In this document: in pieces, positions 5,047-54,735 of the stretch | Layout of the letters: every line of letters starts with the position of its first letter | Numbering within the stretch: the first letter of the stretch is position 1 | DNA from: Vitrella brassicaformis CCMP3155 | Lineage: Eukaryota > Protista > Chromerida | Direction: 5' to 3' | Assembly: GCA_001179505.1 (NCBI GenBank) | Contig: CDMY01000302.1 | Location: forward strand, 62,001-126,000 | Length of the DNA: 64,000 nucleotides | Notes under the pieces: model-generated | What the model was told of the DNA's origin: nothing | What the model saw: the letters and a program-made list of their open reading frames with translations, nothing else | Database searches by the model: none | Made by a program: the position numbers and the translations under genes

Positions 5047-5776
5047 TCCCTAACGCCCCGCCCTGCTCCTTCTTGCCCTTGGATGAGGGCGGCTCGCGAA
5101 GTGCGTCGGTGAAGAGCGCCACGCCCATCACCAGACCGCCCACGACAGCAAAGAACAACCCCTGCACACACAGAGAATGCAGCCGCATGAATCTCGGCCA
5201 TACGTCGGTATGTCTGTGTGCGATTGGCGAGCGCACCACTTCGAAGAGCATGGCGATGAGCATAAGGCCATAATCGAGAGAGAATGATAACGCCGCCAGA
5301 CCCGCTCTCACACAGTGCTTCATTGCCACCGGTCGTGGGCCGCCTCCCGTCAGCTCCCACCAGGTCTCCAGCCGCCCTCTGTACAGCCGCAGAAACACCG
5401 ACGCCATCCCGGCAGCAAAGATTATCAGACACGCACCCAAATACTGCCAGACAGACACGGACCCAAATACTACAGACATGTGCGGCGAGATCTGTCCATT
5501 TGCGTGTGTGTGTTGGCTGACCTCTCCAGTGTTGTTCGTCTGCCAGAAGGAGAAGAGTATGGTGTTCTGGACACTCATGTGGAATGTCATCGAGTGGTGC
5601 TGGTGGTGGCTGCTGTGGTCGTCCGGCTGGTGGGGGTGATGCAACCTGTCAGCATCTGAAAGGCCTCGCCTCTCTTCGGTGTTGTGATCTGACGATGAAT
5701 TGTTTCCTCTCTCGGCCCTCAGATGCACCACATGGCACAGCACACTCGCCGCATACATCCAATGACGAGAATGCAT
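5030..5776 (-). CDS. Ctr/SLC31-family copper transporter, 3 exons (start at 5776 or 5758)
   Basis: His-rich N-terminus followed by MTFHMSVQNTILFSFWQTNN, then TM1 YLGACLIIFAAGMASV. TM2 LDYGLMLIAM contains MxxxM and TM3 GLFFAVVGGLVMG contains GxxxG. The protein ends in GCCD. Approximate exons are 5521-5776, 5237-5443 and 5030-5161. Confidence 0.85.
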   Translation of the reverse strand: MHSRHWMYAASVLCHVVHLRAERGNNSSSDHNTEERRGLSDADRLHHPHQPDDHSSHHQHHSMTFHMSVQNTILFSFWQTNNTGEVSQHTHANGQISPHMSVVFGSVSVWQYLGACLIIFAAGMASVFLRLYRGRLETWWELTGGGPRPVAMKHCVRAGLAALSFSLDYGLMLIAMLFEVVRSPIAHRHTDVWPRFMRLHSLCVQGLFFAVVGGLVMGVALFTDALREPPSSKGKKEQGGALGTGCCD

Positions 5777-5841: not shown

Positions 5842-7171
5842 ATGTCCACCGCCTTGGCTGCCCGCCGCCTGCTGGCGCCTCATCGATCCATTGCGGCCGC
5901 CGCCAGGATTCCTTTTCGCTGCCGTTCCTCGCCATTTCTGCCTCATCCCGTGATTTCATCCATGCAGGCGGGCCTCGCTGTCGCCTCTCGTCATGTATTG
6001 GGCTCCCACCGGTCCCCTGCGCTCGCCGCCACCGCCTCCCCCTCTCCCTACGCCACCCAATTCCAGCAGCGGCTTGTGCATCGACGGCTCCTCACAAGCC
6101 CTGCTGCTGACATTCTTCTGCAGCGATGGGAGAAGAAGAGATATCGGCTCGTCAGCAACTGTGGCGTGCAGTGTGTGATGGATCTGCTGAGGAACTGGTT
6201 TGAGGTGCAGAGGACCTACGAGTTCGCCCATGCTGACCTTGCCGTGCGGCCCTTTGGTGTGGGTGAGGACCTGTGGCTGCCGGTGCAAGTGAAGACGTGC
6301 AAGCAGAAAAGTAGCAGCGGCGGTCGCGCTTGGTTCTTTCACCTTGTTCAGCAGTACGCCGGCATGCCCGTCGTCTGTGTGGCTCTGCGAGAGTATCGCA
6401 TCTGGTGCTACGACGGATCCATGCTGAAGGAAGAAGGCGGCAAGTCGGGTCATATTGCCATCTCTGAGAACGGCAAGTGGGACCATGAGAAATTTCGATG
6501 CTCAGCGACGCTTGAGGGCCAGGAATCTCTGGCACATAAGCTGCTGCTGGCCTATCATGACACCGCATTTATCAAGGACTCGCTGGGGAACATCATGAGG
6601 CAGCGGTCTGAGACCCATCAGAAGGGCGAGGAATCCGTTGCCGCATGGGCCCCTTTGCTGTCTGCTGCTGGTATGGACATCCGTCCACGCCAGCTCCGCT
6701 ACGAGGACACGCCTGTCGATGCCGTCTGGCGGTGGAATGGGAAGAAATTCCTCGTTCAGCACAAACAAGCTGTCCTTCACTCCGGGGTCAAGGACGGCTC
6801 ATATTGTTGTCCTTCAGAAGAGTGCCGGCAGGAAGGGAGCACGTCTCACAATTCAGCTGTACGAGGAACAAGACTTTGATTTGCTCGCCGTCTCTGTGCC
6901 TGGTGATCGCTATTTTTATCTCATTCCCACGGAGGTGCTGGTGCAAAGGGGGAAGGTGAGGGGAAATGGAGAGAGACGCAAGTGCAGCGGCTCGTCATTG
7001 TACCTGTGGACCCCAGAAGCACAGGTCATGCAGAAACGCAAAGAGGAGAACGGGTGCAGAGGAAGAAAGGCTGATTTCTGGGCGAGCGAGTATTTGATTG
7101 ACACATGTGCGGACGATGGCCGAGTGGGGAGGCTGCATGCTATCCTTGAGGGCGCCAAGTGCTCGAAATGA
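5842..7171 (+). pseudogene. Intronless tandem PD-(D/E)XK-like endonuclease with presequence-like leader, copy A; 2-nt deletion frameshift at about 6804
   Basis: Motif 1 is HADLAVRP...WLPVQVKT and motif 2 is TPVDAVWRWNGKKFLVQHK. The frame switches from ORF 5584-6879 to ORF 6638-7171, where copy B reads TAT CTT GTT and copy A reads TAT T GTT. Confidence 0.78.
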
Positions 7172-7699
7172 CGTGACAGGACGGCTGGATGCCTGTGTGT
7201 GCCCGCCTTTTTCAATGAATCCATGTGTCGAGTATGCCAGTGGCCACTCCCCCGCCCATCTACACACATCCACCCATATTCGCATGTGACTGAAAGCCAT
7301 CATAGACAAGCACAAATTGGACAAACAAGCACAGAGATCTTGTTGAAAAATTGGGTGTGGTGTGGATGATTCGTTCACACAGGGTGGTTCAGGTGGTTGC
7401 ATGGAGGCTTATGTGCATGCACACGTGTGTGCGAGTGTTGGCATACAAAAAAGACAGACAGACCTGTGTATGCATACGGTGCCGAAAGCGCAGAAGGGAC
7501 TCGTTGATTTATCTATTCATATTCATCTTTCCACCGGAGAGTCTGTCTGTCTATCTGTCTGTCGAGCACATCAACACACTGTCTGCGATGCATGTGTGTC
7601 GAGAACCATCCACCCACCCACCCAAACATCCACCCACACATCCAGCCGAGCCCTTTGTATGCACGTATCACACATCATGTCATCCTCCCACCCTCCTAA

Positions 7700-9828: not shown

Positions 9829-10818
9829 GGTCTGTGTGCCTACAAATGCGTCACACACACACACACAGACACACAGAGGGATACTGACTGACTGATTGAT
9901 TGATTGATCGTTCCCCTCTCTCGCCCCTGACGTACTCGTGGCGGCGTGAGTCAGTTTGGTTGTTTGTACTCACGTATCGTGGCGGCGGACGAATAGCACC
10001 ACAGCAAGGCATTCCCCGGTTTGTTTTCTTTCCAATGCACGAGCATCACTCACTCACTCATTCACTGATCTGACTGAATCACCGCGTGTGCGTCTCCGTC
10101 GCCGACCTCAGCTGACAAGGCAAGGTGGATGCCAAAGGACGACAGACAGATCTCAGCGCACAGCACAGCCGTCAGGAGGGCTGGGCACCGAACTTGAAAG
10201 AGCCGGAGGGTTTGACTGCCGAGGGGTCAAAGGGTTTGTTACCCTATAGCCCCATTCCCGAGAGGCCAAACTGCGGCGTTTTGTTTGTGCGCCTTAATTG
10301 TCGGACAGCTGTGCGTTGCGAGAGTGAGGCACTCGGCCGACAAGCTTACAAGAGGGCGAGAAGAGTCCCTCGAGTCAGTCGTCCTCTCGGCTGCTTTGGT
10401 GGGGTGGCGGGCCGTTGAGCTGACAGACATCGGAGGTGAGGGAGGCCCAACACTCACTGACTCGCTGACTGAGTGATGCGCTCATCCACTCACGTCAATG
10501 AATTAATGCGTTGGCCTTTCTGTCTGTCTGTCTGTCTGCCTCTCTCTGTGTGTCCTAGTTGTGTGTGTCTGTCGGCCCATCGGTGCAGTGTGGCTGAGGA
10601 CCGATGGCGGCCTCCTCATCTGCCGCTGCCGCTGGTGGTGTTAGCTCATTGACCTCTCTCTGATCTGTCCATCTGAGCATCGAACGAGATGAGCAGCACA
10701 CACACAGATCTGTGAGCAGCATGCTCGATGGACATAATCCTCTGCCGGCTCTGTCGCTCTGTGCAGCCTCTCGTCGACCACCGCCCCACTCATCTGACCG
10801 TCTTGGCCCATCCATCGC

Positions 10819-12453
10819 ATGCAGCAACCAGAGCATCAGCAGCAGCACCCCTTCTCGTATATCTTCGTCGGCCGCCGCACCTTCTACCTCTTCAGCAGCA
10901 TCAAGGACATCCTGCGGCTGAGGGCCATCTGCACCTGGCTCAGAGAGCTCTTCGGAGCGGCCCAGCTAAGAGATCGGCTCCGCCACTCGCTGGGCTCACA
11001 TGCGGGGCTGCGGCGGGCGAATGTGAATGGGCAGCAGCAAGTGCAGCTGCTGCGGTTCGACGACGACCAGTTCGGCGCACATGATCTGCTGGCGGCTGTG
11101 TGTGTGGTGGAGGAGGGGGGCTGGGGCGAGATGGTCGAGGTGATTGAGCTGGCGGGGCAGTGCGGCAATTGTGAGCTGCCTGTGACCCTCAGTGGGGCTG
11201 ACATCAACACACACGCAAACATAACGGTGAGCCAGCAAACAGAGGGGCGGGGAGGGGACAAAAGGAGAAGAGCCTCATTCTCTCTGTCTGTGTCTGTGTA
11301 GGCGTATGTGTCGGCTCCCCGTGTGTTGGCGCAGCTCAAGATGGTCGGCCCCCACATCCACTTCAGTGACGGCAGCTGCCTGCAGCTGTTCCACCACGGC
11401 AACGGTGAGGTGAGGGCCATCATCGACCAGCCCGGCTTCGAGCTGCAAGTCGACCCGCCTCTCTTTCCCTTTCCCGGCCACCTGTACCAGCAGCACAGAC
11501 AGCCACACGACCCACCAGTGCGCAGCATTTCCATCGGCTACTCGACCGACAACGCCAGATGGGTGGCATTCGGTGACCTGGGGCGCATCGATTCGTCAGT
11601 GTCGTCATTTGCCAAGTTCATAATTCTCAAACACTTCCACAAGACTCACCAGATCAATGACACATTCACTACACTCAACAGGTAGCACACCGACGATATC
11701 TTTGGGGTCGAGCAAACCATCAGAAGTCATTTGTTGGTTTTTGTGTGTTCAGAGGTGTTGGTGATAGCGGCCGTCTCCACGACCTCCTGACGCAGTCGCC
11801 CCACACACGGGTGGCCGGCTGCGCGACCACACTCGGCTTGGGCGGTGTGGCGCGGCAGCTGGTGCTGACCGATGGCAGTCATCCCTTCGTCGCGTTGATT
11901 ACCATCATCAGATCGGGAAATGCCGCTCAGAGTGACCGAGAGGGAGAGAGCTCTGCTCGTCGCATGTTGCGTCTTCATCTGTCTTCATCTCTCATTGTCT
12001 GCAGTGAGTGTTCATGTGGTGACCACTGAGGGGGCTGTGTGTGAGAGTGGTGCCTTCAAGCACCGCTTCCCGGTGACCACTCAGCTGGCTCGCGTGGCGT
12101 TGGGGGCGGTGGCGCCATTCGTATTCGACGGACAAGTACAACAACAGCAGCAGCAGCAAGATGACGACAGCGACGATGGTACGGACACACACACACACAG
12201 ATGGATGAAAGACTTGCCTTCTGTCTGTCTGTCTGTCTGTCTGTGCGTGGTATCTGCAGATTCGGACGATGGCAGCGGCGATGAGATTGGTGATGGTGTG
12301 GATGACGGCAGCGGAGAGGGCGGCGGAGGTACACAGCCGCACACACCACAGAGGCCCTCACGTCGACCTCCATGACAATCGTGTGTGTGTGTGTGTGTGT
12401 GTGTGCCTTGGGCAGGTGAGGGTGGCGCAGCTGAGGCGGAGGGCGGCGGCTGA
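10819..12453 (+). CDS. Lineage-specific protein with a degenerate F-box-like N-terminus and acidic/Gly tail, copy A (6 exons, apparently intact)
   Basis: FYLFSSIKDILRLRAICTWLRELF resembles the F-box xxFSFLxxKDLLRLRxVCKxW pattern. Exons splice in phase to the stop at 12451-12453. An inverted paralogue lies at 55514-57135. Confidence 0.7.
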
Positions 12454-13247
12454 CCGATCCATCAGCCAACACGCACTGGTGGGTGCGCAGCGATACATCC
12501 CCTCTGTCGCCATGTGGCTGAGTGCTGCCCTGCCCTCTGTGTGTGTGTGTGTGTGTGTGTGTTGTCAGGAGGGCATCTCAAGTTGGGTGCTGGCTGTCGT
12601 CATTCATCTCTGTCGCCGATCGGTTTGTTCTTCAGGACACATCGCCCACCGCTCACTGTGTGGACCAGCTGCTGCTGCTGTGTGACCGAATGGCTGGCTG
12701 CCTGTGGGTCTCGGTGTGAGTGCCTGTGGTGCTGTCCGGTCCGCTCCCGGCCGATTTTGATGTGATGCGCCGGCCGATGTGTGAGTGTTTGGCTGCCTGA
12801 CTGACTCACTCGCCCTCGGTTCCGCCATGGGTGCCCTGACGGGAATGAAATGATCACACCAGTGATACTCACAGCAAAGGCCACACATCCCGTCAGCCAC
12901 CTGCAGCAGAAACTCGCACGCACCAGAAAGAGCCTGGTGACAAACACAAGGGCGACACTTCGTCGAGCTGTGCCGGGTGTGTCGGCCGCCCACTGCTGCT
13001 GCACAGGCGCATTCACCAATTTAGCATTCCCCACGCCTCATCCGGACTCAGAGAGCACGGCAGCGGCCGCCATACGCTCCTGCAATGGGAGAAACCTCTC
13101 AGCGCGGCGATCGGCAGGGTTCCAAACCATGAGAGCTTAGAGGTGCGGCACTCTCCTCGTCCCAATTGGCTCTGCCTCTGTGCAGCAGCAGCATCTCTGG
13201 GGACCACGACCAACGGGCACTTCACTTCCCAAGCAGCTGAGTTGAGG

Positions 13248-17800: not shown

Positions 17801-20800
17801 TCTGTCTGTCTGTCTGTGAGCCGCCCGTGCACCTCGTCGATGCGCTTCTGTAGGTTCCTGATGGCCTCGGTGCCCTCAAACTCCTCTGCGTACTGAGCCT
17901 GCAGTGCTCCACACACACACACATCCATCTCTCTCTCTCTCTCTCTCTGCGTGTGTGTGTGTGTGTGTGGTTGTGTGGGAGCCGCTGTCTGTACCTGCAG
18001 GGGCTCCAGCTGTTCGCGAATCGCGCCGATGTCTGCACGGACCTTCTTGAGTCTGTCCTGAGACTTGCTGTCGTTCTGATAAACGACAGACACACAGACA
18101 CACAGACAGACAGACAGACAGACAAGAGAGGCAGGATGTGTGTGAGTGTGTGTGTGTCCCTGCAGAGGTACGTATACCTCTTTCTTGAGGGCCTCTGCTT
18201 CGACCTCCAGCTGCGCCAGCTCTCTTTCCAGCTGCATCATGCAGACCGATACACACACACACACACCAAGTCTCTTTGTGTGTGTGTGTGTGTGCGTGTG
18301 TGGGCCTGCCTGGTCTATCTTCTCGGGTTTGCTGTCGAGCTGCACACGCACCGACGCGCACGCCTCGTCAACTACACACACACACACGCACACATCCCAC
18401 AGGCACCCGACACATGTTGTGTGGTGCCATCGTCTGGGTGTGTGTGTGTGCACAATGCCGACCAAGGTCGATTGCCTTGTCCGGCAGGAAGCGGCCGGAG
18501 ATGTACCGAGAGCTGCATTGCATTGCACCCAACACAGACACACAGCCAGACGTCCATCCATCCATCCAGGTGTGTGCATGTCGTGTCGGTCTGTGTGTGT
18601 CGAGAGAGGCAGGCTTCCTCCCGACGCTGGCATGGCTGACCTGAGCTGCACGGCGGCGACGAGAGCGTTGTCTGTGATGCGGATGCCGTGGTGTGACTCG
18701 TACTTGTCCTTCAAACCTGTGTGTGTGTGTGTGTCCATCCATCCATCCACACACACACACGCACAGAGATGGTGGGTTGATGTATCTCTTTCTCTCTCTC
18801 TCTGTGTGTGTCCCTATGTGTGTGGTTGTGTGGGGGTACCAACCGCGCAGTATTGATATGGTGCTCTGGACAGACGGCTCTGGCACCAAGACCTGCTGGA
18901 ACCTGCGCTCAAAAGCGGCATCCTGACACACACCAACACACCAACACATCAGCCGTCTGTCTGTCTGTCTGGCTGGCTGGCTCGATGTCTGTGCATTCGT
19001 ATGTCACTGCTTCCTTCCTCTCTCTCTGTGTCTGCGTGTGTGGATGTGCGGACCTTTTCCACGTGTTGTCGATACTCGTCGAGTGTCGTGGCGCCAATGC
19101 ACCTGACTTCGCCCCTGGCGAGCAGCGGCTTCAGCAGGTTGGCGGCGTCCATCGCACCCTCTCCTTTGCCTACACATCACATACACACACAGAGAGAGAG
19201 AGAGAGATGCAAGTGTGATGTGTGTATGTGTGTGGATGGATACCTGCGCCGAGAACTAGGTGTATCTCGTCAATGAAGAGGATCACCTGGCCTGCACATC
19301 AGACGCACACACACACACACAGACACAGAGAGAGAGAGAGAGAGAGAGAAGGAGAGAGAGAGAGGGATGGGTGTCACCAGAAGTGCCTGCCAGTGTGTGT
19401 GTGTGTGTGTGTGCGTACCTTTGCTCTCCTTGACCTCTTCGAGCACCTTCTTGAGTCGGTCCTCGAACTCTCCCCGATAAGACGCACCGGCCACCAACGC
19501 CCCCATGTCTAGCGCCACGATGCGGCGGCCCTTGAGAGAAGACGGCACATCCCCCTGATGGATGGATGGATGGATCGACGCACACGCACACACACGCACA
19601 CACACACATGAATGGATGGACGAATGGATGGATGGCTACGTGAAGACGCACCTGCACGACTCGCTGCGCGAGTCCCTCGACGATCGCCGTCTTGCCCACG
19701 CCTGCACACACACACACACACACAAACACCAATCCACACACACAGGTGTTGCGGTGTGTCTGTGTGGGCGCCGCTGACCGGGGTCTCCGATGAGCACGGG
19801 GTTGTTTTTGGTGCGTCGTGTGAGCACCTGGATGACCCGCTGGATCTCTTTCTGACGGCCGATGACGGGGTCGAGACGACCTGTCAGCACACAGACAGAC
19901 AGACAGACATTCGTCTCTGCGCGCCTCTATGTGTGTGTGTGTGCAGGTGCATCCTTCTCTCTCTCTCTATTTCTCTCTGTGTGTGTGTGCGTGTGTGTGT
20001 GTGTGTGTACCTTCTTCCGCATCTTTAGTGAGGTCGCGGCCTGTCAATACGTGCGCGGGGGGGGGNNNNNNNNNNNNNNNNNNNNNNNNNNNNNNNNNNN
20101 NNNNNNNNNNNNNNNNNNNNNNNNNNNNNNNNNNNNNNNNNNNNNNNNNNNNNNNNNNNNNNNNNNNNNNNNNNNNNNNNNNNNNNNNNNNNNNNNNNNN
20201 NNNNNNNNNNNNNNNNNNNNNNNNNNNNNNNNNNNNNNNNNNNNNNNNNNNNNNNNNNNNNNNNNNNNNNNNNNNNNNNNNNNNNNNNNNNNNNNNNNNN
20301 NNNNNNNNNNNNNNNNNNNNNNNNNNNNNNNNNNNNNNNNNNNNNNNNNNNNNNNNNNNNNNNNNGGGGGGGGGGAGGGACAAAACGAACGCATGAACGA
20401 ACGAACACAGACACATTGTGCGCAGTTTTGGTGCGCCCGCCATACCTACCGTATTTCTCCAGTTCTTTGAGCTGGAGTGAGCCCATGTCGATGTCGCCCT
20501 GCTCTGTCACCTTGAGCTCCTCTATCACACTGCATGCCATCCATCCATCCACAGAGGTGCTCATGTGCGTGTGAGTGTACCTGAGGAGCGCCTGTATGTT
20601 GACCCCGGCTGCTTCAAGTGCCTTCTGCACATGACGATCTCGCGGCAGCTGATCGATCGATGCCGATGCACACACAAATGGGTGCGTGTGTGTGCATACA
20701 TGTGTCTGGGCATCTGTGTGTGTGTACCATGGCAATGAGGTGCCTGACCTGCACCACCTCCCCCCTCTCCCCCGCATAACGCTGAAGCCACACACCACAC

Positions 20801-21790
20801 CACATTTACACCACACACAGACAGCGGTGTGTCTATGCTATGTGTCGCTTGTGTGTATACCGACCCCGCCCACCTCTGCCAGCCGAAAGATGGACACAAG
20901 CGCGCCGCTTGGCGGGGCGCTCGATTGCCCCTACACACAACACCACACACACAGGGGGAGAGGGAGAGAGAGAGAACCATTCACACAGACGCACGAAAGT
21001 GGGTTGACAGTCACAAAAAACGGCTGTATGAGTACAATGAGAAGACAGTAGGTAATTTTATTGTATTGTCTCATTCAGGCATACATAGAGTCGGTGTTCG
21101 TAGCTAGAGATGACTCTCGAAATGCGTCTACCCATGGCTGAGTGTACCAGTTCAGGATGCACACGCGGCAGCCGACCGATCTCGTTGTTCAACGTCTCCT
21201 GTAAACTGCACACACCACACACATACGCACACACAAAGACTATGTGTGTACGCCTCTGCCGGCACTGTCGGCACACCTCTCTCTCTCTCTCTTTCTCTGT
21301 CTGTGTGTGTGTGTGTGTGTCTGTGAGGGTAGGCTTACACATTGACATCGCCCCCGGCCCGCTCAAGCAGCTTGCAGCCTGACATATACGGCCACAGACA
21401 CACGGACACATCCACACTCGACAATATCGTGTGTGTGTGTGTGGATCGTACCGAGGTCGCTGCTATCTCTGAATATGGCAGCGGCGAGGTGCAGAGGGAT
21501 CGTCTGCTGGTGGTTGTACTGCTGGGCGTACGACTGCACACACACACACACACACATCGATGTACTCACAAACACGCAGGCACCGATGTGTGTGCGCCCA
21601 TCTGTCTGTCTGTCTGTGTGGTGCTGAGGAATGGGTATATGCTGACCTGCGCGACAGCGACCATCTCAGCGGCCTTCTCTGTCGAGTCCTTCGTGAACCC
21701 CTACACATCACACACAGCACCCCACCATAAGCACATGTGTTGGATGTGTGATAAACATTCTGACTGACCTCAGTGCCCCTGCCTCCCCTG
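14882..21790 (-). CDS. HSP101: ClpB/Hsp101 AAA+ disaggregase, cytosolic type, about 30 exons; exact first exon uncertain
   Basis: [47 protein letters not shown] (Walker A1), LFIDEIH, and [28 protein letters not shown]. These are followed by [30 protein letters not shown] (Walker A2), [26 protein letters not shown] and an acidic tail [15 protein letters not shown]. Confidence 0.95.
20066..20365. other. Assembly gap (300 N) inside a ClpB intron
   Basis: Poly-G on both sides. The flanking exons join as EKY-G|[10 protein letters not shown], so no coding sequence is missing. Confidence 0.9.
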
Positions 21791-22354
21791 AATGTGGCCG
21801 CATGTGTGCTGGGCACACACCACACACACGCCAGCACCACCACCAGCATCACACGCATCACGGCACCTGAAGCAGACAGACACTCACACGCGCGCCGACA
21901 GAGAGAGATCTGCTCGTCTGCGCAGTGCCCCTGGAAGTCTGCTGCTCTCTGCGTGTGTGTGGCGTACGGCACGGCAGCTACCTTTCACTGTGACAGCTGG
22001 GATCTGCTCCTTCTTCATTGTGCAGACGGCAAGTTGAACGACATACACACCACACCGAGGTGAGATGCGATGAGATGCTGTTAGAAGGTCGACTGCCCAC
22101 AAGCAAACACTCCCAGAAAACGACTACGCAGCCAGCGATGACTTGGAGCGGAGTGCGAGCTCACGACAGAACGCACTGCGAGCTTACCCCTAAAGCCCCC
22201 ATTTGATCTGGACTCTGAGAAATCTGGACTCTGAGAGAGCGAAACGAAGTGTCGTTGCTAGTAGTACAGGGGATGCAGTGACAGTAGGTGGGCGATACTG
22301 TGCTGGAGAAGAAGGTGGGCAGAGGGAGAGAGGGAGGGGGTCTCCTGCTCTGCA

Positions 22355-30400: not shown

Positions 30401-32452
30401 TGAGCAGCAGAGACACACCTATCTCTCTCTCTCTCTCTCTTTCTTTCTCTTCGTCTCTTCGTTGGTGTGTGCCATGACGGTTGATGTCGTGTCGGTATGG
30501 CATCAGGTATATGCAGGAGGGTCTGCTGATGGCGGACTACCCGCTGACGTTGGGCCACTCGCCTTACCACAGGGAGTACTACAGACATCCCCGATACTCA
30601 TCGGGGGAACTCTTCGTGTACGAGCGAACGAGTGCTTAAGACACCCATCCATCCACACGTGTGTGGATTGTTGCCGTGTGGCTGTCAATCAGGTCGTGTG
30701 TGACATCGTCACTGATAGTGAACGCCTTGTTCAATCCCTCCCTGCCACTGCTGGTCAGGGAGATGGTCGCTAGCAGAATTCTGGTCAGTCCCTCAGACAC
30801 ACACGGTTGTACGCAGACGTGCAATCTGCACCGACCTGTGTGCAGGTGTTGTCGGTGCCTGCTTCCTTTGCTGGGAGACAGTATGAGGGGCTCGTCAAAC
30901 ACTTTCTCGACGAGCGGGTCAGGCGCCATATGCACAGTGATACATGAGACATGATACACACGTTAACTGCGAGAACTGTGCGTGTGAAATGTGTGCAGGA
31001 TTTGCTTCCGATCGTCTTGTATCGCTCTGCCTTTGTGGACCCTGCTCTCTCGCCATTGCTCGAAAACAGCGCACTCAGCAACAAGGTGGGCACGTCATCC
31101 GTCAATGTACAGAAACGTACACAAGACTGGATGGATGGATGGATGTCTGTGTGCAGGTGGTGCCTGCGTCCAGTGCCCCTGATGCAGCTTCACAGACGCC
31201 CTTTCTGAGACGGCTCAAGACCGTGGGCAACTTGCTGGGTACGTATAGACGGACACGCGCATTCATTCATCCCTCTATCAACGTGTGCACATACATGACA
31301 TGCAGGCAACGCCACGCCTCCAGCCCCCTCCCACTCCTTCACATGCCGCACACACGCCGGCAACTTCACCAGACGGTCTGCGTCATCCCTCGGCACCGAT
31401 GACGACGACAAGCCAGGTACCCACTCGCATGCACAGACATATACAGACACATACAGACACGTGAATTCCTGTGCGGCTGTCACGCCATGCAACGCAGAGG
31501 GGGACGAGGGTCAGGCTGCCCCCTATTCCTTTGCTGAGTTGCGCAAGAAGCGACGGAGCAGATCGCTCGCCCCTGAAGCAGTGCACAAGGGTATGGTATA
31601 AATGAGCGTGCCTGTTCCTCCGTACGTATGTCTGCTGTCGTGCAGGGGCTGAGACGGATGGCGCCACCACGCCCGGAGGACGGTGCGCTCGTCCGTGTGT
31701 GTATATCAAATACCCATGTATACGTGTGTGTATATTTGTGCACAGGCCGGCCCACCCGTCCCGGCGCAAGTCGTTCCTGCGTCGGCTCTCCCTCGCACTG
31801 AGAATCGGCAAGAGCGACAGCATCGTCACCGAAGGGCAAGCAGCAGCCGCACATACACACAGAGAGAGAGACAGACAAATTTGTACACCCACGCGTGTGA
31901 ATTGCACTGCACATACATACAGGCAAAAGCGGGGGTCAGAACAAGTAGAGACACCACCCCTCGTAAGCGTGCCGAGCGACGCCTACAGAAAAGAGAGACA
32001 CGAGAGTATCGGTGTATTTGTGGCAACAGGTGACGGCCGCGTCTAGCCGTACTGCGGTGCTGAGAAAGCGGAAGAAGGGGAGGAAGGCGGTCGACAAGAA
32101 ATATCCCGTCCGCGAGCCGCTCACCGCCATTCAGAGAAATGGCGGGTCCAAGAACCTCAGAATGCAAAAGTCAGCCATCTATGAAGCCACGAAGCCATCG
32201 ATCAGACACACACACATTGAGTATGTCTGGTTTAGGTGGGTGTTGGTAGCACCGGCAGCGTCCACAACGATCGGCGCTCTCGATCAGGTGGGCATCGTCA
32301 TTCGTGCCGATGTGCAGCACATCGTTTCCTTTATGTGTGTGTGTGCAGGTCATTTGCTTCTCGCCGCGAGCGAATTTGCATCTGTAGTAGTAGTTGGTGC
32401 ACCCATTCACGCACAGACGGGTAGATTCGCTGCGTACGTATGTGCAAAGTAG
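22355..32452 (+). CDS. Slo/BK-like K+ channel with two RCK domains and long low-complexity inserts; 3' end uncertain
   Basis: The pore VTISTVGYGDVFP lies at 24264-24302, followed by S6 GRAFSVLMIAGGIAAF. RCK1 includes KHIVVTGN, AIVIIAN, EDSENVVRVLSVK, VVCLDEFKLQVISKGCVVPGFSALICNL and EYDKGITNELY. RCK2 includes LPVVVL, FYVEGSSTNLFDLERCAF and VIAELVYDGNVAF. Confidence 0.9.
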
Positions 32453-32559
32453 CTGGGCACCCACGTGAGTGACAACGACGTGTGTGTTTCGGATTGTGTT
32501 TGCGTTCACTCGCCGGCTCGCTGGCCGGCCATTGTAGAAAGGGGAACAACAATGTAGCT

Positions 32560-34825
32560 AGCGCTTCGTGAGTCCATCCATGGTTCCAAACACTCTTGAC
32601 TCTCTCATTGTCTGACCCATGCATGCGCCTGAATACATGAATCTTCGCTCACGTGCTTGCTGGCGTGTCTCGTGTGCGAATGGACGCAAAAATCGACGTG
32701 ATATAAAATGTAGACAGCAATTTCTTTGCATCGTGCTTCCCTCTTGGCAAGATCGTGACACAGCTGGGGCGCTTTGACCTCGCCGTATTGGTCCCGCAGC
32801 TCCCGCAGCTCCGTGATGGGCATGCGTGAGTGCGGGACACGGCCAGGGGCGAGCGGCGCCCTCAGCTTGCCCTCGTTATACTCGCGGACGTTCAGGGGGC
32901 CGGGGGGGATACCAACAACTGCATGCACCGAGAGAGAGGAAGGGAGATGCAGTTGGTGTGATGGATCACCCCGCCGCCCATTCTCATGCGCATGGATGTA
33001 TGTATATAGATACCTGGTCGGGCGGCGCCGGACGAGAGGCGGTCCCAATACTGGTGGCCCAGCGTCTCGCGGATGACCGTCTTGTTGATCTCAATCAGGG
33101 GCTGCATGAACTGCCAACAAGACAGCAGGCCTTCCTCCTTGTCTCCCTGTCTGCCGTGTGATTGTCTGTCCTTAAATACCTCATCTCTCGTGGTCGACAG
33201 CACCGGGCCGTGGAGTGTGGCGAGGGTCTCGTCAACGATCAAGTTGACGGCGTCATGGGGCATGGTGCATTTCACCGACAACTCGTCCACCACTGCACAC
33301 ACATCCACAGAGGGAGGATGGATGGGTGGCGTGCGTGTGCGTGTGCGTGAGCGTGTGCGTGTGCGTGTGCGTGTGTGTGTGTGCGTTTGTATGTGACCTT
33401 GTTGAGGTCGTTCTGGTGTTTCTCGACCAGCGCGAGGGCGTCGGGCAGATTGGCGACCAACCGTGGGCAGTTTCCCCCGCCGTTGATGAGGGCCGCCGCA
33501 CAGAGCCCGCCTGCATGAACACGCAATGCAGGCACAACACAGGCGTGTGTGATGTTGTTATGTTTTCTCGTGATGTGTGTGTACCGAGGGAGAGCCCACA
33601 CCATCTCGGGGTTGACAACGTCACCGATGCCGTTGGCAGGCTGGATGGCTATCTGAGTGAGTGAGAGCCACACACGTAGGGACATATAGATGATGAGTGG
33701 GTGTGGGTGTGGGTGTGGGTGACGGGTGTGTGTGGGGGGGGGGGGGGTTACATGTANNNNNNNNNNNNNNNNNNNNNNNNNNNNNNNNNNNNNNNNNNNN
33801 NNNNNNNNNNNNNNNNNNNNNNNNNNNNNNNNNNNNNNNNNNNNNNNNNNNNNNNNNNNNNNNNNNNNNNNNNNNNNNNNNNNNNNNNNNNNNNNNNNNN
33901 NNNNNNNNNNNNNNNNNNNNNNNNNNNNNNNNNNNNNNNNNNNNNNNNNNNNNNNNNNNNNNNNNNNNNNNNNNNNNNNNNNNNNNNNNNNNNNNNNNNN
34001 NNNNNNNNNNNNNNNNNNNNNNNNNNNNNNNNNNNNNNNNNNNNNNNNNNNNNNNNGGGGGGGGGGGGGGTTACATGTACTGACGATGATGCGGATGATG
34101 ATGCCCCAGAGCCACACGTACCACTGCCCCTCGTACTTCTTGATTATGAATATTAGGATACAGCTGCACACACCACCCACACCACCCACACCACATACAC
34201 CACCCACCCACCCACACACACACACACACATACGATGGACGGTCTGCGAGTCTCTGTGTCTCCGTGTGTGGGCTCACATGATATCGCACGCCGCGATCAG
34301 ATGCATCTTGTCGGTTCTCCTGGCCGCTCGGATGGCCCTCGATACACACTCCAAGGCGGAGTTGTTGGCGGCAAAGTTCAGCAGCAGCTCCTCGGCCTTG
34401 CCCTCCAGCCACTGATTGATGGATGGCACACGACACATTGCAGGTGTGTGCGCGTTGCGTGTGTGTGTCGTGCATGTCATTTGTGTTTGTGCGTACGTCT
34501 AGCAGCTCGTAGAAGTGTTTGTATTTGTGTGGTCGAATGGCCCAGAGGAACTCTCTCTCGCTCTTAAGCAGCAGCTTCATGATGTCTGGGGCGGCCGTCT
34601 ATCAGCGCCAGCTGCACACACACAGTAGAACACAGCACGACAGACACATCAGAGAATGGATGCCCCATGGGTGTGTGTGCGTGTGCGTGTCTGCACTCAC
34701 GGCAGAGTGGCAGTCCTTGGGGAAGAAGCCCTTCATTAGCCGGTAGTAGAAGTCGGGGAACGAGTCGTAAATGTTCTTGAAGTGGCGTACCAGCCCATCG
34801 TACTTAAAGCAATGCGAGTCCAGCT

Positions 34826-53134: not shown

Positions 53135-54460
53135 TCACTTCAAGCATTTGGGGCCCTCAAGGATAGCATACAGCCTTCCCACCCCTGTCTCTAGCGTGTG
53201 TGTGTCGATGATGTACTCACTCGCCCAGAAGTCAGCCATCCTTCCTCTGCCCTTGCCTCGCTTCTCCTCTCTGCGTCTCTGCATGACCTCTGGAGGCCAG
53301 ATACGTACAGATGAGCCAGTGCACTGACGTCTCTGCCCGTGTGCATTCACCTTCCCCCTTTACACCAGCACCGCCATGGGAATCAGATAGAAAAAGCGAT
53401 CACCGGGCAGCGAGACGGCCAGCAGATCAAAGTCTCCCTCATCATACAGCCGATATGTGCGACGTCCGCCCTCCTTGCCAGCGCTCTTGTGAAGGACAAC
53501 AAGATATGAGCCGTTGGTGTGGTCGGTGCGAATGCCGGCTAGTTTGTGCTGAATGAGGAACTTCCTGCCATTCCAGCACCAGACTGCGTCGACAGGCGTG
53601 TCCTCGTAGCTGAGCTGGCGTGGACGGACATCCATACCAGCAGCAGACAGCAAAGGGGCCCATGCGGCAACGGATGCCTCGCCCTTCTGATGGCGCTCAG
53701 ACCGCTGCAGCATGATGTTCGCCAGGGAGTTCTTGGCGAATGAAGGGCCCTGATAGGCCAGCAGCAGCTTGTGGGACAGAGATGCCGGCCCATCAAGGGC
53801 CGTCGAGCATCGGAATTTCGCATGGTCCCACTTGCCATTCTCATAGACGGCAAGGAGACCAGACCTGCCGCATACTTCCTTCAGCATGGATCCGCTGTAG
53901 CACCAGATGCGGTAGTCCGAGAGAGCCACACAGACGACGGGGATGCCGGCATACTGATCGACATGATGGAACTGCCAAGCACGACCGTAGTTGCTGCTCT
54001 TCTTCTTGGTGGTCTTGACTTGCACCGGCAGCCACACATCTTCATACACGCCAAGGGAACGCACTGCAAGGTCAGTATGGGCCTTCTCATACGTCCTCTG
54101 CACCTCAAACCATCGCCTCAGCAGATCCATCACACACTGAACGCCCGAGTTGCTGATGAGCCGCAGTTTCTTCTTCTCCCATCGCTGGAGCAGAATGTCA
54201 GCAGCAGGGCTTGAGAGGAGCCGTCGATGCACAAGCTGCTGGAATTGGGTGGCGAAGGGAGAGGACGCGCTGGCAGCAGAGGCAGGGGACCGGTGGGAGC
54301 CCGATAGATGACGAGAGGCGACAGCGAGGCCCGCCTGCATCGATGAAATCACAGGATGAGGCAGAAATGGCGAGGAACGGCAGCAGAGAGGAATCCTGGC
54401 GGCGGCCGCAATGGATCGATGAGGCGCCAGCAGGCATCGGCCAACGAACAGGAGGCACAT
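53135..54460 (-). pseudogene. Intronless tandem PD-(D/E)XK-like endonuclease, copy B; premature TAA at 53360-53362
   Basis: HTDLAVRS..WLPVQVKT and TPVDAVWCWNGRKFLIQHK. Copy A's CAA is TAA here, and the frame continues unchanged to ..ILEGPKCLK* at 53135. Confidence 0.8.
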
Positions 54461-54519: not shown

Positions 54520-54735
54520 AGTGTACTGAGTGTGCTCTGTCAGCTGCTGTATCTGAGAGCCGATCGATATCCATCCATCGATCCATCCATGGTTGTCTGG
54601 TACCTGGATAATATTTGCTGCGGGGATGGCGTCTGTGTTTCTGCGGCTGTACACAGAGGGCGGCTGGAGAACTGGTGGCAGCTGACGGGAGGCGGACCAC
54701 CAGCGATGAAGCACTGCATCAAGGCGGGCCTTCAA
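54520..54735 (+). pseudogene. Internally deleted, truncated remnant of the Ctr copper transporter
   Basis: SVLCQLLYLRADR matches SVLCHVVHLRAER. It then jumps to IIFAAGMASVFLRLY[+2]RGRLENWWQLTGGGP.AMKHCIKAGL. TM2 and TM3 are absent. Confidence 0.8.

What the first reader, a model, noticed from the sequence alone, without database searches (positions are those of the whole stretch)
5842..7171. Intronless tandem PD-(D/E)XK nuclease-like gene with a mitochondrial-presequence-like leader (two copies in the window)
Seen: an ORF of about 440 codons with no introns in a genome where neighbours have many. The first 85-90 residues are R/S/A/L-rich with no D/E (MSTALAARRLLAPHRSIAAAARIP...RRLLTS) and are conserved in both copies. 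Two D...QxK motifs follow (HADLAVR..VQVKT; PVDAVW..VQHK). Established: D...QxK is the variant PD-(D/E)XK active site of I-Ssp6803I-type homing endonucleases. Inference: an acquired, possibly viral or organellar homing-type nuclease retargeted to the mitochondrion. It may be a selfish organelle-acting nuclease or a domesticated DNA/RNA-processing factor, analogous to but distinct from RAP-domain proteins. I do not know of a description of such a system in chromerids.
Basis: partly seen in the sequence, partly recalled or inferred. Interest (0 to 1): 0.85.

Follow-up and report, generated by a model that had tools for sequence, protein, structure and literature searches.

The report
Giant-virus-related double nuclease gene, two broken copies
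The window (Vitrella brassicaformis nuclear DNA) holds two slightly broken copies of an undescribed gene family. The family encodes a two-domain restriction-enzyme-like nuclease whose only relatives are in giant viruses and in Vitrella's close algal and predatory kin, and it carries an N-terminal leader that looks like a mitochondrial import signal.

Summary
The gene is real, but it is not one 440-codon ORF. Copy 1 (5842-7171, +) needs a 2-nt frameshift at 6802-6805. Copy 2 (54460-53135, -) has an in-frame TAA at 53362-53360. The copies lie 47 kb apart, inverted, at 81% nt identity.

An intact, intronless paralog (P0003, 427 aa) sits on another Vitrella contig. Three further close paralogs were checked; two are broken.

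The fold claim holds. The AF2 model (pLDDT 83.5) matches I-Ssp6803I best (Foldseek 2.8e-7). The family profile hits MepB (2e-8) and I-Ssp6803I (9e-7). The two halves are homologous to each other (hhalign 89%). Both keep E/D/QxK in about 96 of 100 relatives.

Relatives are about 100 giant-virus proteins with a Zn-ribbon N-terminus, plus Chromera, Vitrella and Alphamonas proteins. The chrompodellid proteins have Arg-rich, acid-free leaders ending in RRL[LF][ST].

Flanking genes are ordinary host genes, and one paralog has four GT-AG introns, so this is an old nuclear resident. The transfer direction is unresolved. Mitochondrial import and the substrate are inferred, not shown.

The parts
5842..7171 (+). 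Copy 1 of the gene: leader plus two nuclease domains plus tail. It is readable only across a frameshift. Stop codon TGA at 7169-7171.
   Evidence: The public model P0002 is from Vitrella brassicaformis contig CDMY01000302.1.
5842..6093 (+). Leader, residues 1-84. It is Arg/Ser/Ala/Leu-rich, has no D or E, and ends in RRLL|TS, which looks like an R-3 processing site.
   Evidence: The equivalent part of P0003 has pLDDT below 50 in the AF2 model.
6142..6597 (+). Nuclease domain 1, with D in HADLAV (6229-6246) and QxK in VQVKT (6283-6297). The helix Glu of the family consensus is Ser here (RLVSNCGV, 6145-6168).
6598..6801 (+). First part of nuclease domain 2 in frame 1: KGEESVAAW (6622-6648), PVDAVW (6712-6729), VQHK (6754-6765).
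6802..6805 (+). Break in copy 1: two bases are missing relative to copy 2 and the paralogs, which shifts the frame.
6806..7171 (+). Rest of domain 2 and the conserved tail in frame 2: YEEQDFDLLAV (6860-6892), FYLIPTEVL (6914-6940), ADFWASEYLID (7070-7102).
   Evidence: (weak PF11645 hit).
6754..6817 (+). The 64-nt GT..AG 'intron' of the public gene model P0002. It hides the frameshift and removes the QHK motif, so it is most likely an annotation artefact.
   Evidence: The removed stretch is coding in all paralogs.
53135..54460 (-). Copy 2 of the gene. It is in a single frame, with stop TGA at 53137-53135, but is interrupted by an in-frame TAA.
53360..53362 (-). Break in copy 2: TAA where copy 1 has CAA. 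It cuts off the last 74 codons, the conserved tail. The sequence after it stays in frame with dN/dS of about 0.35.
53543..54079 (-). Catalytic motifs of copy 2: HTDLAV (54079-54062), VQVKT (54025-54011), PVDAVW (53596-53579), IQHK (53554-53543).
5313..5426 (.). A patch of the neighbouring Ctr copper-transporter gene that is repeated beside copy 2 (54716-54607, 86%). It marks a DNA-level segmental duplication.
7382..7696 (.). A downstream flank patch shared with the copy 2 locus (52772-52473, 72%).

Best explanation
The window carries two members of a nuclear gene family of chrompodellid alveolates (Vitrella, Chromera, Alphamonas).

The product is a single-chain pseudo-dimer: two tandem, mutually homologous PD-(D/E)XK domains of the I-Ssp6803I/MepB type. 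Each domain keeps a Glu / Asp / Gln-x-Lys metal-site constellation.

The family is shared with giant viruses (Nucleocytoviricota). There the same two-domain module follows a Zn-ribbon, or in some relatives an AP2-like, N-terminal domain. In chrompodellids that domain is replaced by an Arg-rich, acid-free presequence.

Inferred mechanism: the precursor is imported into the mitochondrion and the leader is removed near RRL[LF]|[ST]. The mature monomer then uses its two active sites to cut both strands of a specific, asymmetric nucleic-acid target, most likely DNA.

The family evolves by birth and death. P0003 is intact, while both window copies each carry one recent inactivating lesion.

Shown here: the fold, the internal duplication, motif conservation, the viral and chrompodellid distribution, host-gene flanks, introns in one paralog, the lesions, and dN/dS.

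Inferred only: import, cleavage activity, the substrate, and the direction of virus-host transfer.
For: Fold and family:
- AF2 of P0003 with a 100-sequence alignment gave pLDDT 83.5 and pTM 0.79.
- Foldseek PDB top hits are I-Ssp6803I 2OST (2.8e-7, probability 1.0) and MepB 4LQE, followed by SPARDA nuclease, PvuII, EcoRV and Hjc.
- hmmsearch of the family profile against PDB gives 4LQE at 2.2e-8 and 2OST at 9.1e-7.
- The window copies give only a weak PF11645 hit.

Internal duplication:
- hhalign of the two halves gives probability 89% and E 2e-6.
- A joint alignment puts E, D, Q, K and Y of the two halves in the same columns.
- D120/Q137/K139 and D277/Q290/K292 are kept in 96-99 of 100 relatives.

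Distribution:
- 236 cluster representatives score E below 1e-3.
- The named ones are Vitrella, Chromera and Alphamonas; the Alphamonas ones are complete transcriptome ORFs.
- Homologues lie on contigs with NCLDV capsid, mimivirus-type poly(A) polymerase, RNR, UDG, dUTPase and Erv1, and in a GVMAG.
- BFVD gives full-length matches to AaV, Klosneuvirus and Hyperionvirus.

Nuclear residency:
- The flanks are host genes with introns.
- P0007 has four GT-AG introns of 63-83 nt, and its spliced product is collinear with P0003.

Selection:
- dN/dS is 0.41-0.48 among copy 1, copy 2 and P0003, including the part after the stop in copy 2.

Leader:
- The first acidic residue is at 36-90 in Vitrella and 39-61 in Alphamonas.
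- Net charge is +4 to +7 in the first 40 residues, with far more R than K, and there is no hydrophobic signal-peptide core.
- Viral homologues are Lys-rich and have acidic residues from position 2-22.
- Chromerid plastid import needs a signal peptide, whereas mitochondrial import uses an amphiphilic presequence (PMC6668581).
Against: - No trained targeting predictor, localisation data or expression data for Vitrella were available.
- The public gene models of the window copies start at an internal Met (residue 41), so the first 40 leader residues might not be translated.
- Both window copies, and two of the three other close paralogs examined (P0005 and P0006 loci), are broken. That fits decay as well as turnover.
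- The helix Glu of domain 1 (E in 84 of 100 relatives) is Ser in the Vitrella subfamily and Gly or Ser in Alphamonas. One active site may therefore be weakened.
- The window pieces do not reach Pfam's threshold for PF11645 (13-14 bits against 26.1).
- Several Chromera models lack a leader or have acidic N-termini.
Confidence: 0.6

Rival explanations
1. Decaying selfish or viral relic. The copies are leftovers of a giant-virus-type free-standing endonuclease gene that spread in the nuclear genome and has no host function. On this view the leader is a chance or non-coding feature.
For: - Four of the five close paralogs examined carry stops or frameshifts.
- No Pfam family reaches threshold.
- Viral relatives are abundant.
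Against: - dN/dS is 0.41-0.48, not about 1.
- Each window copy has only one lesion in 1.3 kb.
- P0003 is intact.
- P0007 has acquired four introns and keeps its catalytic residues.
- Alphamonas has three complete transcribed ORFs.
- Presequence-like leaders recur across genera without sequence similarity.
- There are no conserved flanks or terminal repeats.
Confidence: 0.15
2. Organelle RNA-processing factor. The imported protein cuts or binds mitochondrial RNA, for example the fused cox transcripts or rRNA fragments, rather than DNA. It would be functionally analogous to RAP/FASTK proteins.
For: - Chromerid mitochondria make fusion transcripts that are later cleaved by unknown factors (PMC8554336).
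- The PD-(D/E)XK fold also serves RNA enzymes (PMC3424549).
- The helix Glu of domain 1 is lost in Vitrella and Alphamonas.
Against: - All close structural relatives act on DNA: I-Ssp6803I, PvuII, EcoRV and Hjc.
- Viral homologues carry DNA-binding-type N-termini, a Zn-ribbon or an AP2-like domain.
- There is no RAP (PF08373) hit at E up to 1.
Confidence: 0.15
3. Non-mitochondrial nuclease. The protein acts in the nucleus, the cytosol (for example against infecting giant viruses or in DNA repair) or the plastid, and the basic leader is a nuclear signal or is untranslated.
For: - The public models of the window copies begin at Met41, skipping half the leader.
- Some Chromera models have no leader.
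- The kinship with viral genes would suit a defence or counter-defence role.
Against: - The leader ORF is kept open, with only 3-nt indels, in copies 1 and 2 and in P0003.
- Its composition is that of a presequence: acid-free for 76-90 residues and rich in Arg, Ser and Ala.
- It has no hydrophobic signal-peptide core, which chromerid plastid import requires.
Confidence: 0.1

Closest known systems
I-Ssp6803I homing endonuclease (PDB 2OST; Pfam PF11645 PDDEXK_5)
   Same: - Same PD-(D/E)XK core fold; it is the best Foldseek hit (2.8e-7, TM 0.68-0.72 on the target).
- Same variant site, Asp...Gln-x-Lys (YDLV...KVQVK in 2OST).
- The family profile matches it at 9e-7.
   Different: - I-Ssp6803I is a 150-aa single domain that works as a homotetramer and is encoded in a group I intron of a cyanobacterial tRNA gene (PMC3384342).
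- Here two diverged domains are fused in one chain of about 340 aa plus a leader.
- The gene is free-standing in a eukaryotic nucleus.
- Pfam's threshold is not reached by the window copies.
MepB (PDB 4LQE; Pfam PF08877 MepB-like)
   Same: - It is the best sequence-profile match of the C-terminal domain, including the tail (2.2e-8).
- One relative, P0151, passes Pfam's cut-off (37.5 against 27 bits).
- It is Foldseek rank 3.
   Different: - MepB is a single-domain bacterial protein of unknown function.
- It has Q-S-R where this family has Q-x-K.
- The window copies give no PF08877 hit.
Uncharacterised two-domain proteins of Imitervirales giant viruses (AaV A0A076FH51, Klosneuvirus A0A1V0SIJ8, Hyperionvirus A0A3G5A8P9, and about 100 metagenomic clusters)
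   Same: - Full-length structural match to both domains (E 6e-17 to 6e-15, about 360-370 aligned columns).
- Sequence E-values down to 1e-14.
- The same catalytic columns.
   Different: - The viral proteins start with a Cys-rich Zn-ribbon-like domain (CGH...CxxC) and are Lys-rich.
- The chrompodellid proteins start with an Arg-rich, acid-free leader.
- None of the viral proteins has a described function.
RAP-domain / FASTK-type organellar proteins of apicomplexans and relatives
   Same: They are nuclear-encoded, organelle-targeted proteins with a PD-(D/E)XK-like domain in the same broad lineage (PMC3424549). They are a possible functional analogue.
   Different: - There is no sequence match to RAP (PF08373) at E up to 1.
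- Here there are two domains with well-kept catalytic residues.
- The nearest relatives are DNA endonucleases and viral proteins.
Single-chain homing endonucleases derived from homodimers (for example monomeric LAGLIDADG enzymes; engineered single-chain PvuII, PDB 3KSK)
   Same: They follow the same architectural logic: two copies of a dimer-forming nuclease domain fused in one chain, which allows asymmetric targets. Single-chain PvuII appears among the Foldseek hits (rank 7).
   Different: - The LAGLIDADG enzymes have a different fold.
- The scPvuII match is weak (TM about 0.2).
- The pseudo-dimer geometry of this family was not examined at coordinate level.

Membership tests
PD-(D/E)XK nuclease superfamily | Restriction-endonuclease-like alpha/beta core fold | tested here: met
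   The AF2 model has pLDDT above 90 over the domains. All significant Foldseek PDB hits are PD-(D/E)XK enzymes.
PD-(D/E)XK nuclease superfamily | Catalytic Asp ... (Asp/Glu/Gln)-x-Lys on consecutive strands, plus a helix Glu | tested here: met
   D...QxK is present in both halves of both window copies and in 96-99 of 100 relatives. The helix Glu is present in domain 2 (offset by one column). In domain 1 it is replaced by Ser in the Vitrella subfamily.
I-Ssp6803I family (Pfam PF11645) | Score above Pfam's gathering cut-off | tested here: not met
   The window pieces score 13.0 and 14.3 bits against 26.1. Relatives reach 20-25.8 bits. The family profile against 2OST gives E 9e-7, so this is a related but separate family.
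I-Ssp6803I family (Pfam PF11645) | Single-domain subunit acting as a homotetramer | tested here: not met
   Two homologous domains lie in one chain. The oligomeric state cannot be tested here.
Homing endonuclease (functional class) | Encoded inside, or next to, a mobile intron or intein at its own target site | tested here: not met
   The gene is free-standing between host nuclear genes. Homology among paralog loci ends at the CDS. In the viral loci it is free-standing too.
Homing endonuclease (functional class) | Site-specific double-strand cleavage of a long target | not testable with these tools
   This needs a biochemical assay.
MepB-like (Pfam PF08877) | Score above Pfam's gathering cut-off | tested here: inconclusive
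   The window copies give no hit. Relative P0151 passes at 37.5 against 27 bits and P0069 scores 26.6. The profile against 4LQE gives 2.2e-8.
RAP domain (Pfam PF08373) | Sequence match to the RAP profile | tested here: not met
   There is no hit at E up to 1 for any window piece, nor for ten relatives at E up to 0.05.
Mitochondrial presequence | N-terminal, Arg-rich, acid-free, hydroxylated, amphiphilic; no hydrophobic signal-peptide core | tested here: met
   The first acidic residue is at 90/88/76/36 in Vitrella and 57/39/61 in Alphamonas. Net charge is +4 to +7 in residues 1-40, maximum hydrophobic moment is 0.44-0.70, and maximum mean hydrophobicity is at most 0.55. These are composition measures only.
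Mitochondrial presequence | Positive call by a trained predictor, processing at the predicted site, or demonstrated import | not testable with these tools
   No TargetP, MitoFates or localisation data were available. The RRL[LF][ST] motif was read by eye.
Endogenous giant-virus insertion (GEVE) | Neighbouring genes of viral type, with virus-like composition | tested here: not met
   The neighbours are Arf, UCH, Ctr, D-Tyr deacylase, ClpB, ClpP, ubiquitin, PALP and a PKD channel, all with introns. GC is uniform at about 0.55-0.60.

The most novel reading that the evidence does not exclude
A two-domain I-Ssp6803I-like endonuclease, exchanged between giant viruses and the chrompodellid ancestor, was domesticated as a mitochondrion-imported, sequence-specific nuclease. 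Its expanded paralogs (at least 8 in Vitrella and at least 19 modules in Chromera) would then be the enzymes that break and recombine the fragmented, scrambled mitochondrial genomes of chromerids, or that cleave their fused cox/cob transcripts.
Probability: 0.15. Interest if true: 0.85.

Novelty: new variant of a known kind. Interest (0 to 1): 0.6.

Why it matters
- It would be the first eukaryotic nuclear family of I-Ssp6803I/MepB-type nucleases. A 2012 census listed PF11645 as prokaryotic only (PMC3424549).
- It is a clear case of a gene family shared by giant viruses and one alveolate lineage.
- It has a new single-chain architecture for this fold.
- Chromerid mitochondrial genomes are short, scrambled, recombining linear pieces, and their fused transcripts are cut by unknown factors (PMC8554336). 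A family of imported nucleases with intact active sites, expanded in exactly these organisms, gives a concrete candidate that can be tested.

Tried and rejected
- **Pfam on the window pieces:** only sub-threshold PF11645 hits.
- **phmmer of copy 2 against PDB:** nothing useful.
- **Profile of domain 1 alone against PDB:** no hit. Its identity rests on the fold and on hhalign to domain 2.
- **Word-indexed protein searches with alignments A2 and A5:** returned almost nothing, because the candidate prefilter saturated. This says nothing about distribution.
- **Rooting the family by its own internal duplication:** contradictory. The domain 1 subtree nests chrompodellids inside viruses, while the domain 2 subtree nests viruses inside the GC-rich, eukaryote-like set. 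No transfer direction is claimed.
- **Mobile-element reading:** rejected. Nucleotide homology among paralog loci stops at the CDS ends and there are no terminal repeats.
- **GEVE reading:** rejected on the neighbours.
- **Retroposition for the copy 1 / copy 2 pair:** rejected, because flank patches and a fragment of the neighbouring Ctr gene were copied too.
- **The 'intron' in public model P0002:** rejected as an artefact.
- **Rfam and tRNA scans of the window:** empty.
- **Literature searches:** found no description of the family. The original I-Ssp6803I structure paper is not held.

Full report
**What is at the coordinates**

The window is Vitrella brassicaformis CCMP3155 nuclear DNA, contig CDMY01000302.1.

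Copy 1:
- At 5842-7171 (+) there is a coding region, but it is not one ORF.
- The frame opened by the ATG at 5842 runs to a stop at 6879. The last third lies in another frame that ends at 7171.
- Aligned to the second copy, copy 1 lacks two bases at 6802-6805.

Copy 2:
- It lies at 54460-53135 on the minus strand, 47 kb away and inverted. Identity is 81% at the nucleotide level and 75% at the protein level.
- It is in one frame but has TAA at 53362-53360 where copy 1 has CAA. This removes the last 74 codons.

'Tandem' therefore applies to the two domains in the protein, not to the two genes.

The public model of copy 1 (P0002) bridges the frameshift with a 64-nt GT..AG 'intron' at 6754-6817. 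That 'intron' deletes the QHK motif, so I regard it as an artefact.

**The leader**

- Residues 1-89 of copy 1 have no Asp or Glu (A18, S12, R11, L10, P9). The first acidic residue is at position 90 in copy 1, 88 in copy 2 and 76 in P0003.
- With about 10-12% acidic residues in the mature part, chance gives this about 5e-5 of the time.
- The leader ORF is kept open in three paralogs, with only 3-nt indels.
- In the AF2 model the leader is disordered (pLDDT below 50 for residues 1-60).

The same kind of N-terminus recurs in relatives without sequence similarity. It is Arg-rich, with net charge +4 to +7 in the first 40 residues, acid-free for 36-90 residues, and rich in Ser, Thr and Ala. It has no hydrophobic core of the signal-peptide type. 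It is seen in:
- Vitrella P0007;
- the three Alphamonas edax transcripts;
- several Chromera proteins.

The giant-virus homologues instead begin with a Lys-rich, Cys-containing domain that has acidic residues from position 2-22.

The leaders of Vitrella and Alphamonas end in RRLLTS, RRLLSS, RRLFTS or RRLFTQ. By my reading this fits the R-3 rule of the mitochondrial processing peptidase. The rule itself comes from established knowledge and was not tested here.

Chromerid plastid proteins need a signal peptide ahead of the transit peptide, whereas mitochondrial ones use an amphiphilic presequence (PMC6668581). This favours the mitochondrion over the plastid.

**Fold and active sites**

Pfam gives only a weak PF11645 hit on the C-terminal half (E 0.043 and 0.11). 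An exhaustive HMMER search found 236 cluster representatives.

Using a 100-sequence alignment (A2):
- The profile matches MepB 4LQE (2.2e-8) and I-Ssp6803I 2OST (9.1e-7). In the alignment 2OST shows YDLV...KVQVK opposite the family's YDF...KVQEK.
- AlphaFold2 gives a confident model of the intact paralog P0003 (pLDDT 83.5, pTM 0.79, above 90 over the domains).
- Foldseek ranks I-Ssp6803I first (2.8e-7, probability 1.0), then MepB, the SPARDA nuclease domain, single-chain PvuII, EcoRV and Hjc.

The two halves:
- They are homologous to each other (hhalign probability 89%, E 2e-6).
- A joint alignment puts Glu, Asp, Gln, Lys and a Tyr of both halves in the same columns.
- D120/Q137/K139 and D277/Q290/K292 (P0003 numbering) are kept in 96-99 of 100 sequences and in both window copies.

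One caveat: the helix Glu of domain 1 (Glu in 84 of 100) is Ser in the Vitrella subfamily and Gly or Ser in Alphamonas.

**Relatives**

- Named hits are Vitrella paralogs (P0003-P0007, P0072), many Chromera velia proteins and three Alphamonas edax transcripts with complete ORFs.
- Several of the Chromera proteins carry two full modules, that is, four nuclease domains.
- About 100 AT-rich proteins of about 380 aa come from metagenomes. Three contexts were examined:
  - one with NCLDV major capsid, mimivirus-type poly(A) polymerase and an intein-bearing RNR;
  - one with UDG and dUTPase;
  - one with Erv1/Alr.

  One is in a GVMAG.
- BFVD gives full-length matches to Aureococcus anophagefferens virus, Klosneuvirus and Hyperionvirus proteins. 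All are uncharacterised.
- Two further relatives carry an AP2-like N-terminus.

**Phylogeny**

In a tree of 145 modules, all chrompodellid sequences fall in a 44-row set (SH-aLRT 99) together with some GC-rich metagenomic sequences. That set stands opposite a 101-row viral set.

The tree is unrooted. Rooting by the internal duplication gave opposite answers for the two halves. The direction of transfer is therefore open.

**Residency and turnover**

- The genes around both window copies and around P0003 are ordinary intron-bearing host genes. This is not a viral insertion block.
- P0003 is intact and intronless.
- The more distant paralog P0007 has four GT-AG introns of 63-83 nt, and its spliced product is collinear with P0003. 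The family has therefore been in the nucleus for a long time.
- dN/dS among copy 1, copy 2 and P0003 is 0.41-0.48, and 0.34-0.36 in the tail after copy 2's stop. The lesions are therefore recent, or possibly assembly errors.
- The P0005 locus has two in-frame stops. The P0006 locus has a frameshift and a stop.
- Nucleotide homology between paralog loci stops at the CDS. The exception is the copy 1 / copy 2 pair, which also shares flank patches and a fragment of the neighbouring Ctr gene. That pair arose by segmental duplication, not by transposition or retroposition.

**Most likely mechanism**

I-Ssp6803I works as a homotetramer in which two subunits contact a 23-bp pseudo-palindromic site (PMC3384342). 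By analogy with other homing enzymes that became single-chain, a fusion of two diverged domains with two kept active sites should act as a monomeric pseudo-dimer. It would cut both strands of an asymmetric site.

In giant viruses the module follows a Zn-ribbon-like (or, in some relatives, AP2-like) N-terminal domain. In chrompodellids a presequence takes the place of that domain. I infer import into the mitochondrion and action on mitochondrial nucleic acid, with DNA more likely than RNA.

Chromerid mitochondrial genomes are short, scrambled, recombining linear molecules, and their fusion transcripts are cleaved by unknown factors (PMC8554336). This makes an attractive target, but nothing here links the protein to it.

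**Novelty and verdict**

I found no paper that describes this family. In 2012 PF11645 was listed as prokaryotic only.

- The fold and chemistry are known.
- The two-domain architecture, the giant-virus/chrompodellid distribution and the presequence are new.

Noticed in passing
window 10672-12809 (+) and 57290-55184 (-): A second duplicated gene pair at 75% nt identity. The public models are 415 aa each with no Pfam family. It lies on the opposite side of the nuclease gene in the two loci, so the duplication was followed by rearrangement.
   Followed up: partly
window 54607-54716 (vs 5313-5426): A 114-nt patch of the Ctr copper-transporter gene that neighbours copy 1 is repeated beside copy 2 (86% identity). 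It appears to be only a fragment.
   Followed up: partly
window 5842-7171 vs 54460-53135: Synonymous divergence between the two copies rises from 5' to 3': leader 0.135, domain 1 0.37, domain 2 0.33, tail 0.67. This may reflect partial gene conversion or extra constraint on the 5' end; it is unexplained.
   Followed up: no
window 6754-6817: The public gene model for copy 1 contains a 64-nt 'intron' that masks the frameshift and deletes a catalytic motif. The public models of both copies also start at an internal Met (residue 41).
   Followed up: yes
L012 6001-7500 (Vitrella contig CDMY01000569.1): Paralog P0007 has four short GT-AG introns (6257-6327, 6376-6458, 6563-6625, 7025-7101), while the window subfamily has none.
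   Followed up: yes
Chromera proteins P0008-P0012, P0015, P0018 (no window coordinates): Chromera models of 650-1040 aa contain two complete modules, that is, four nuclease domains. These could be real fusions or neighbouring genes merged by the gene caller.
   Followed up: no
P0151, P0069 (metagenomic relatives; L009 8001-9446): Two relatives carry an AP2-like N-terminal domain (Pfam AP2 E 2e-4, below the cut-off). P0069 sits on a 92.8-kb contig with sparse short gene calls, as a eukaryotic genome would give.
   Followed up: partly
window 20001-22000 and 32001-34000: GC dips to 0.475 and 0.50, against about 0.55-0.60 elsewhere.
   Followed up: no
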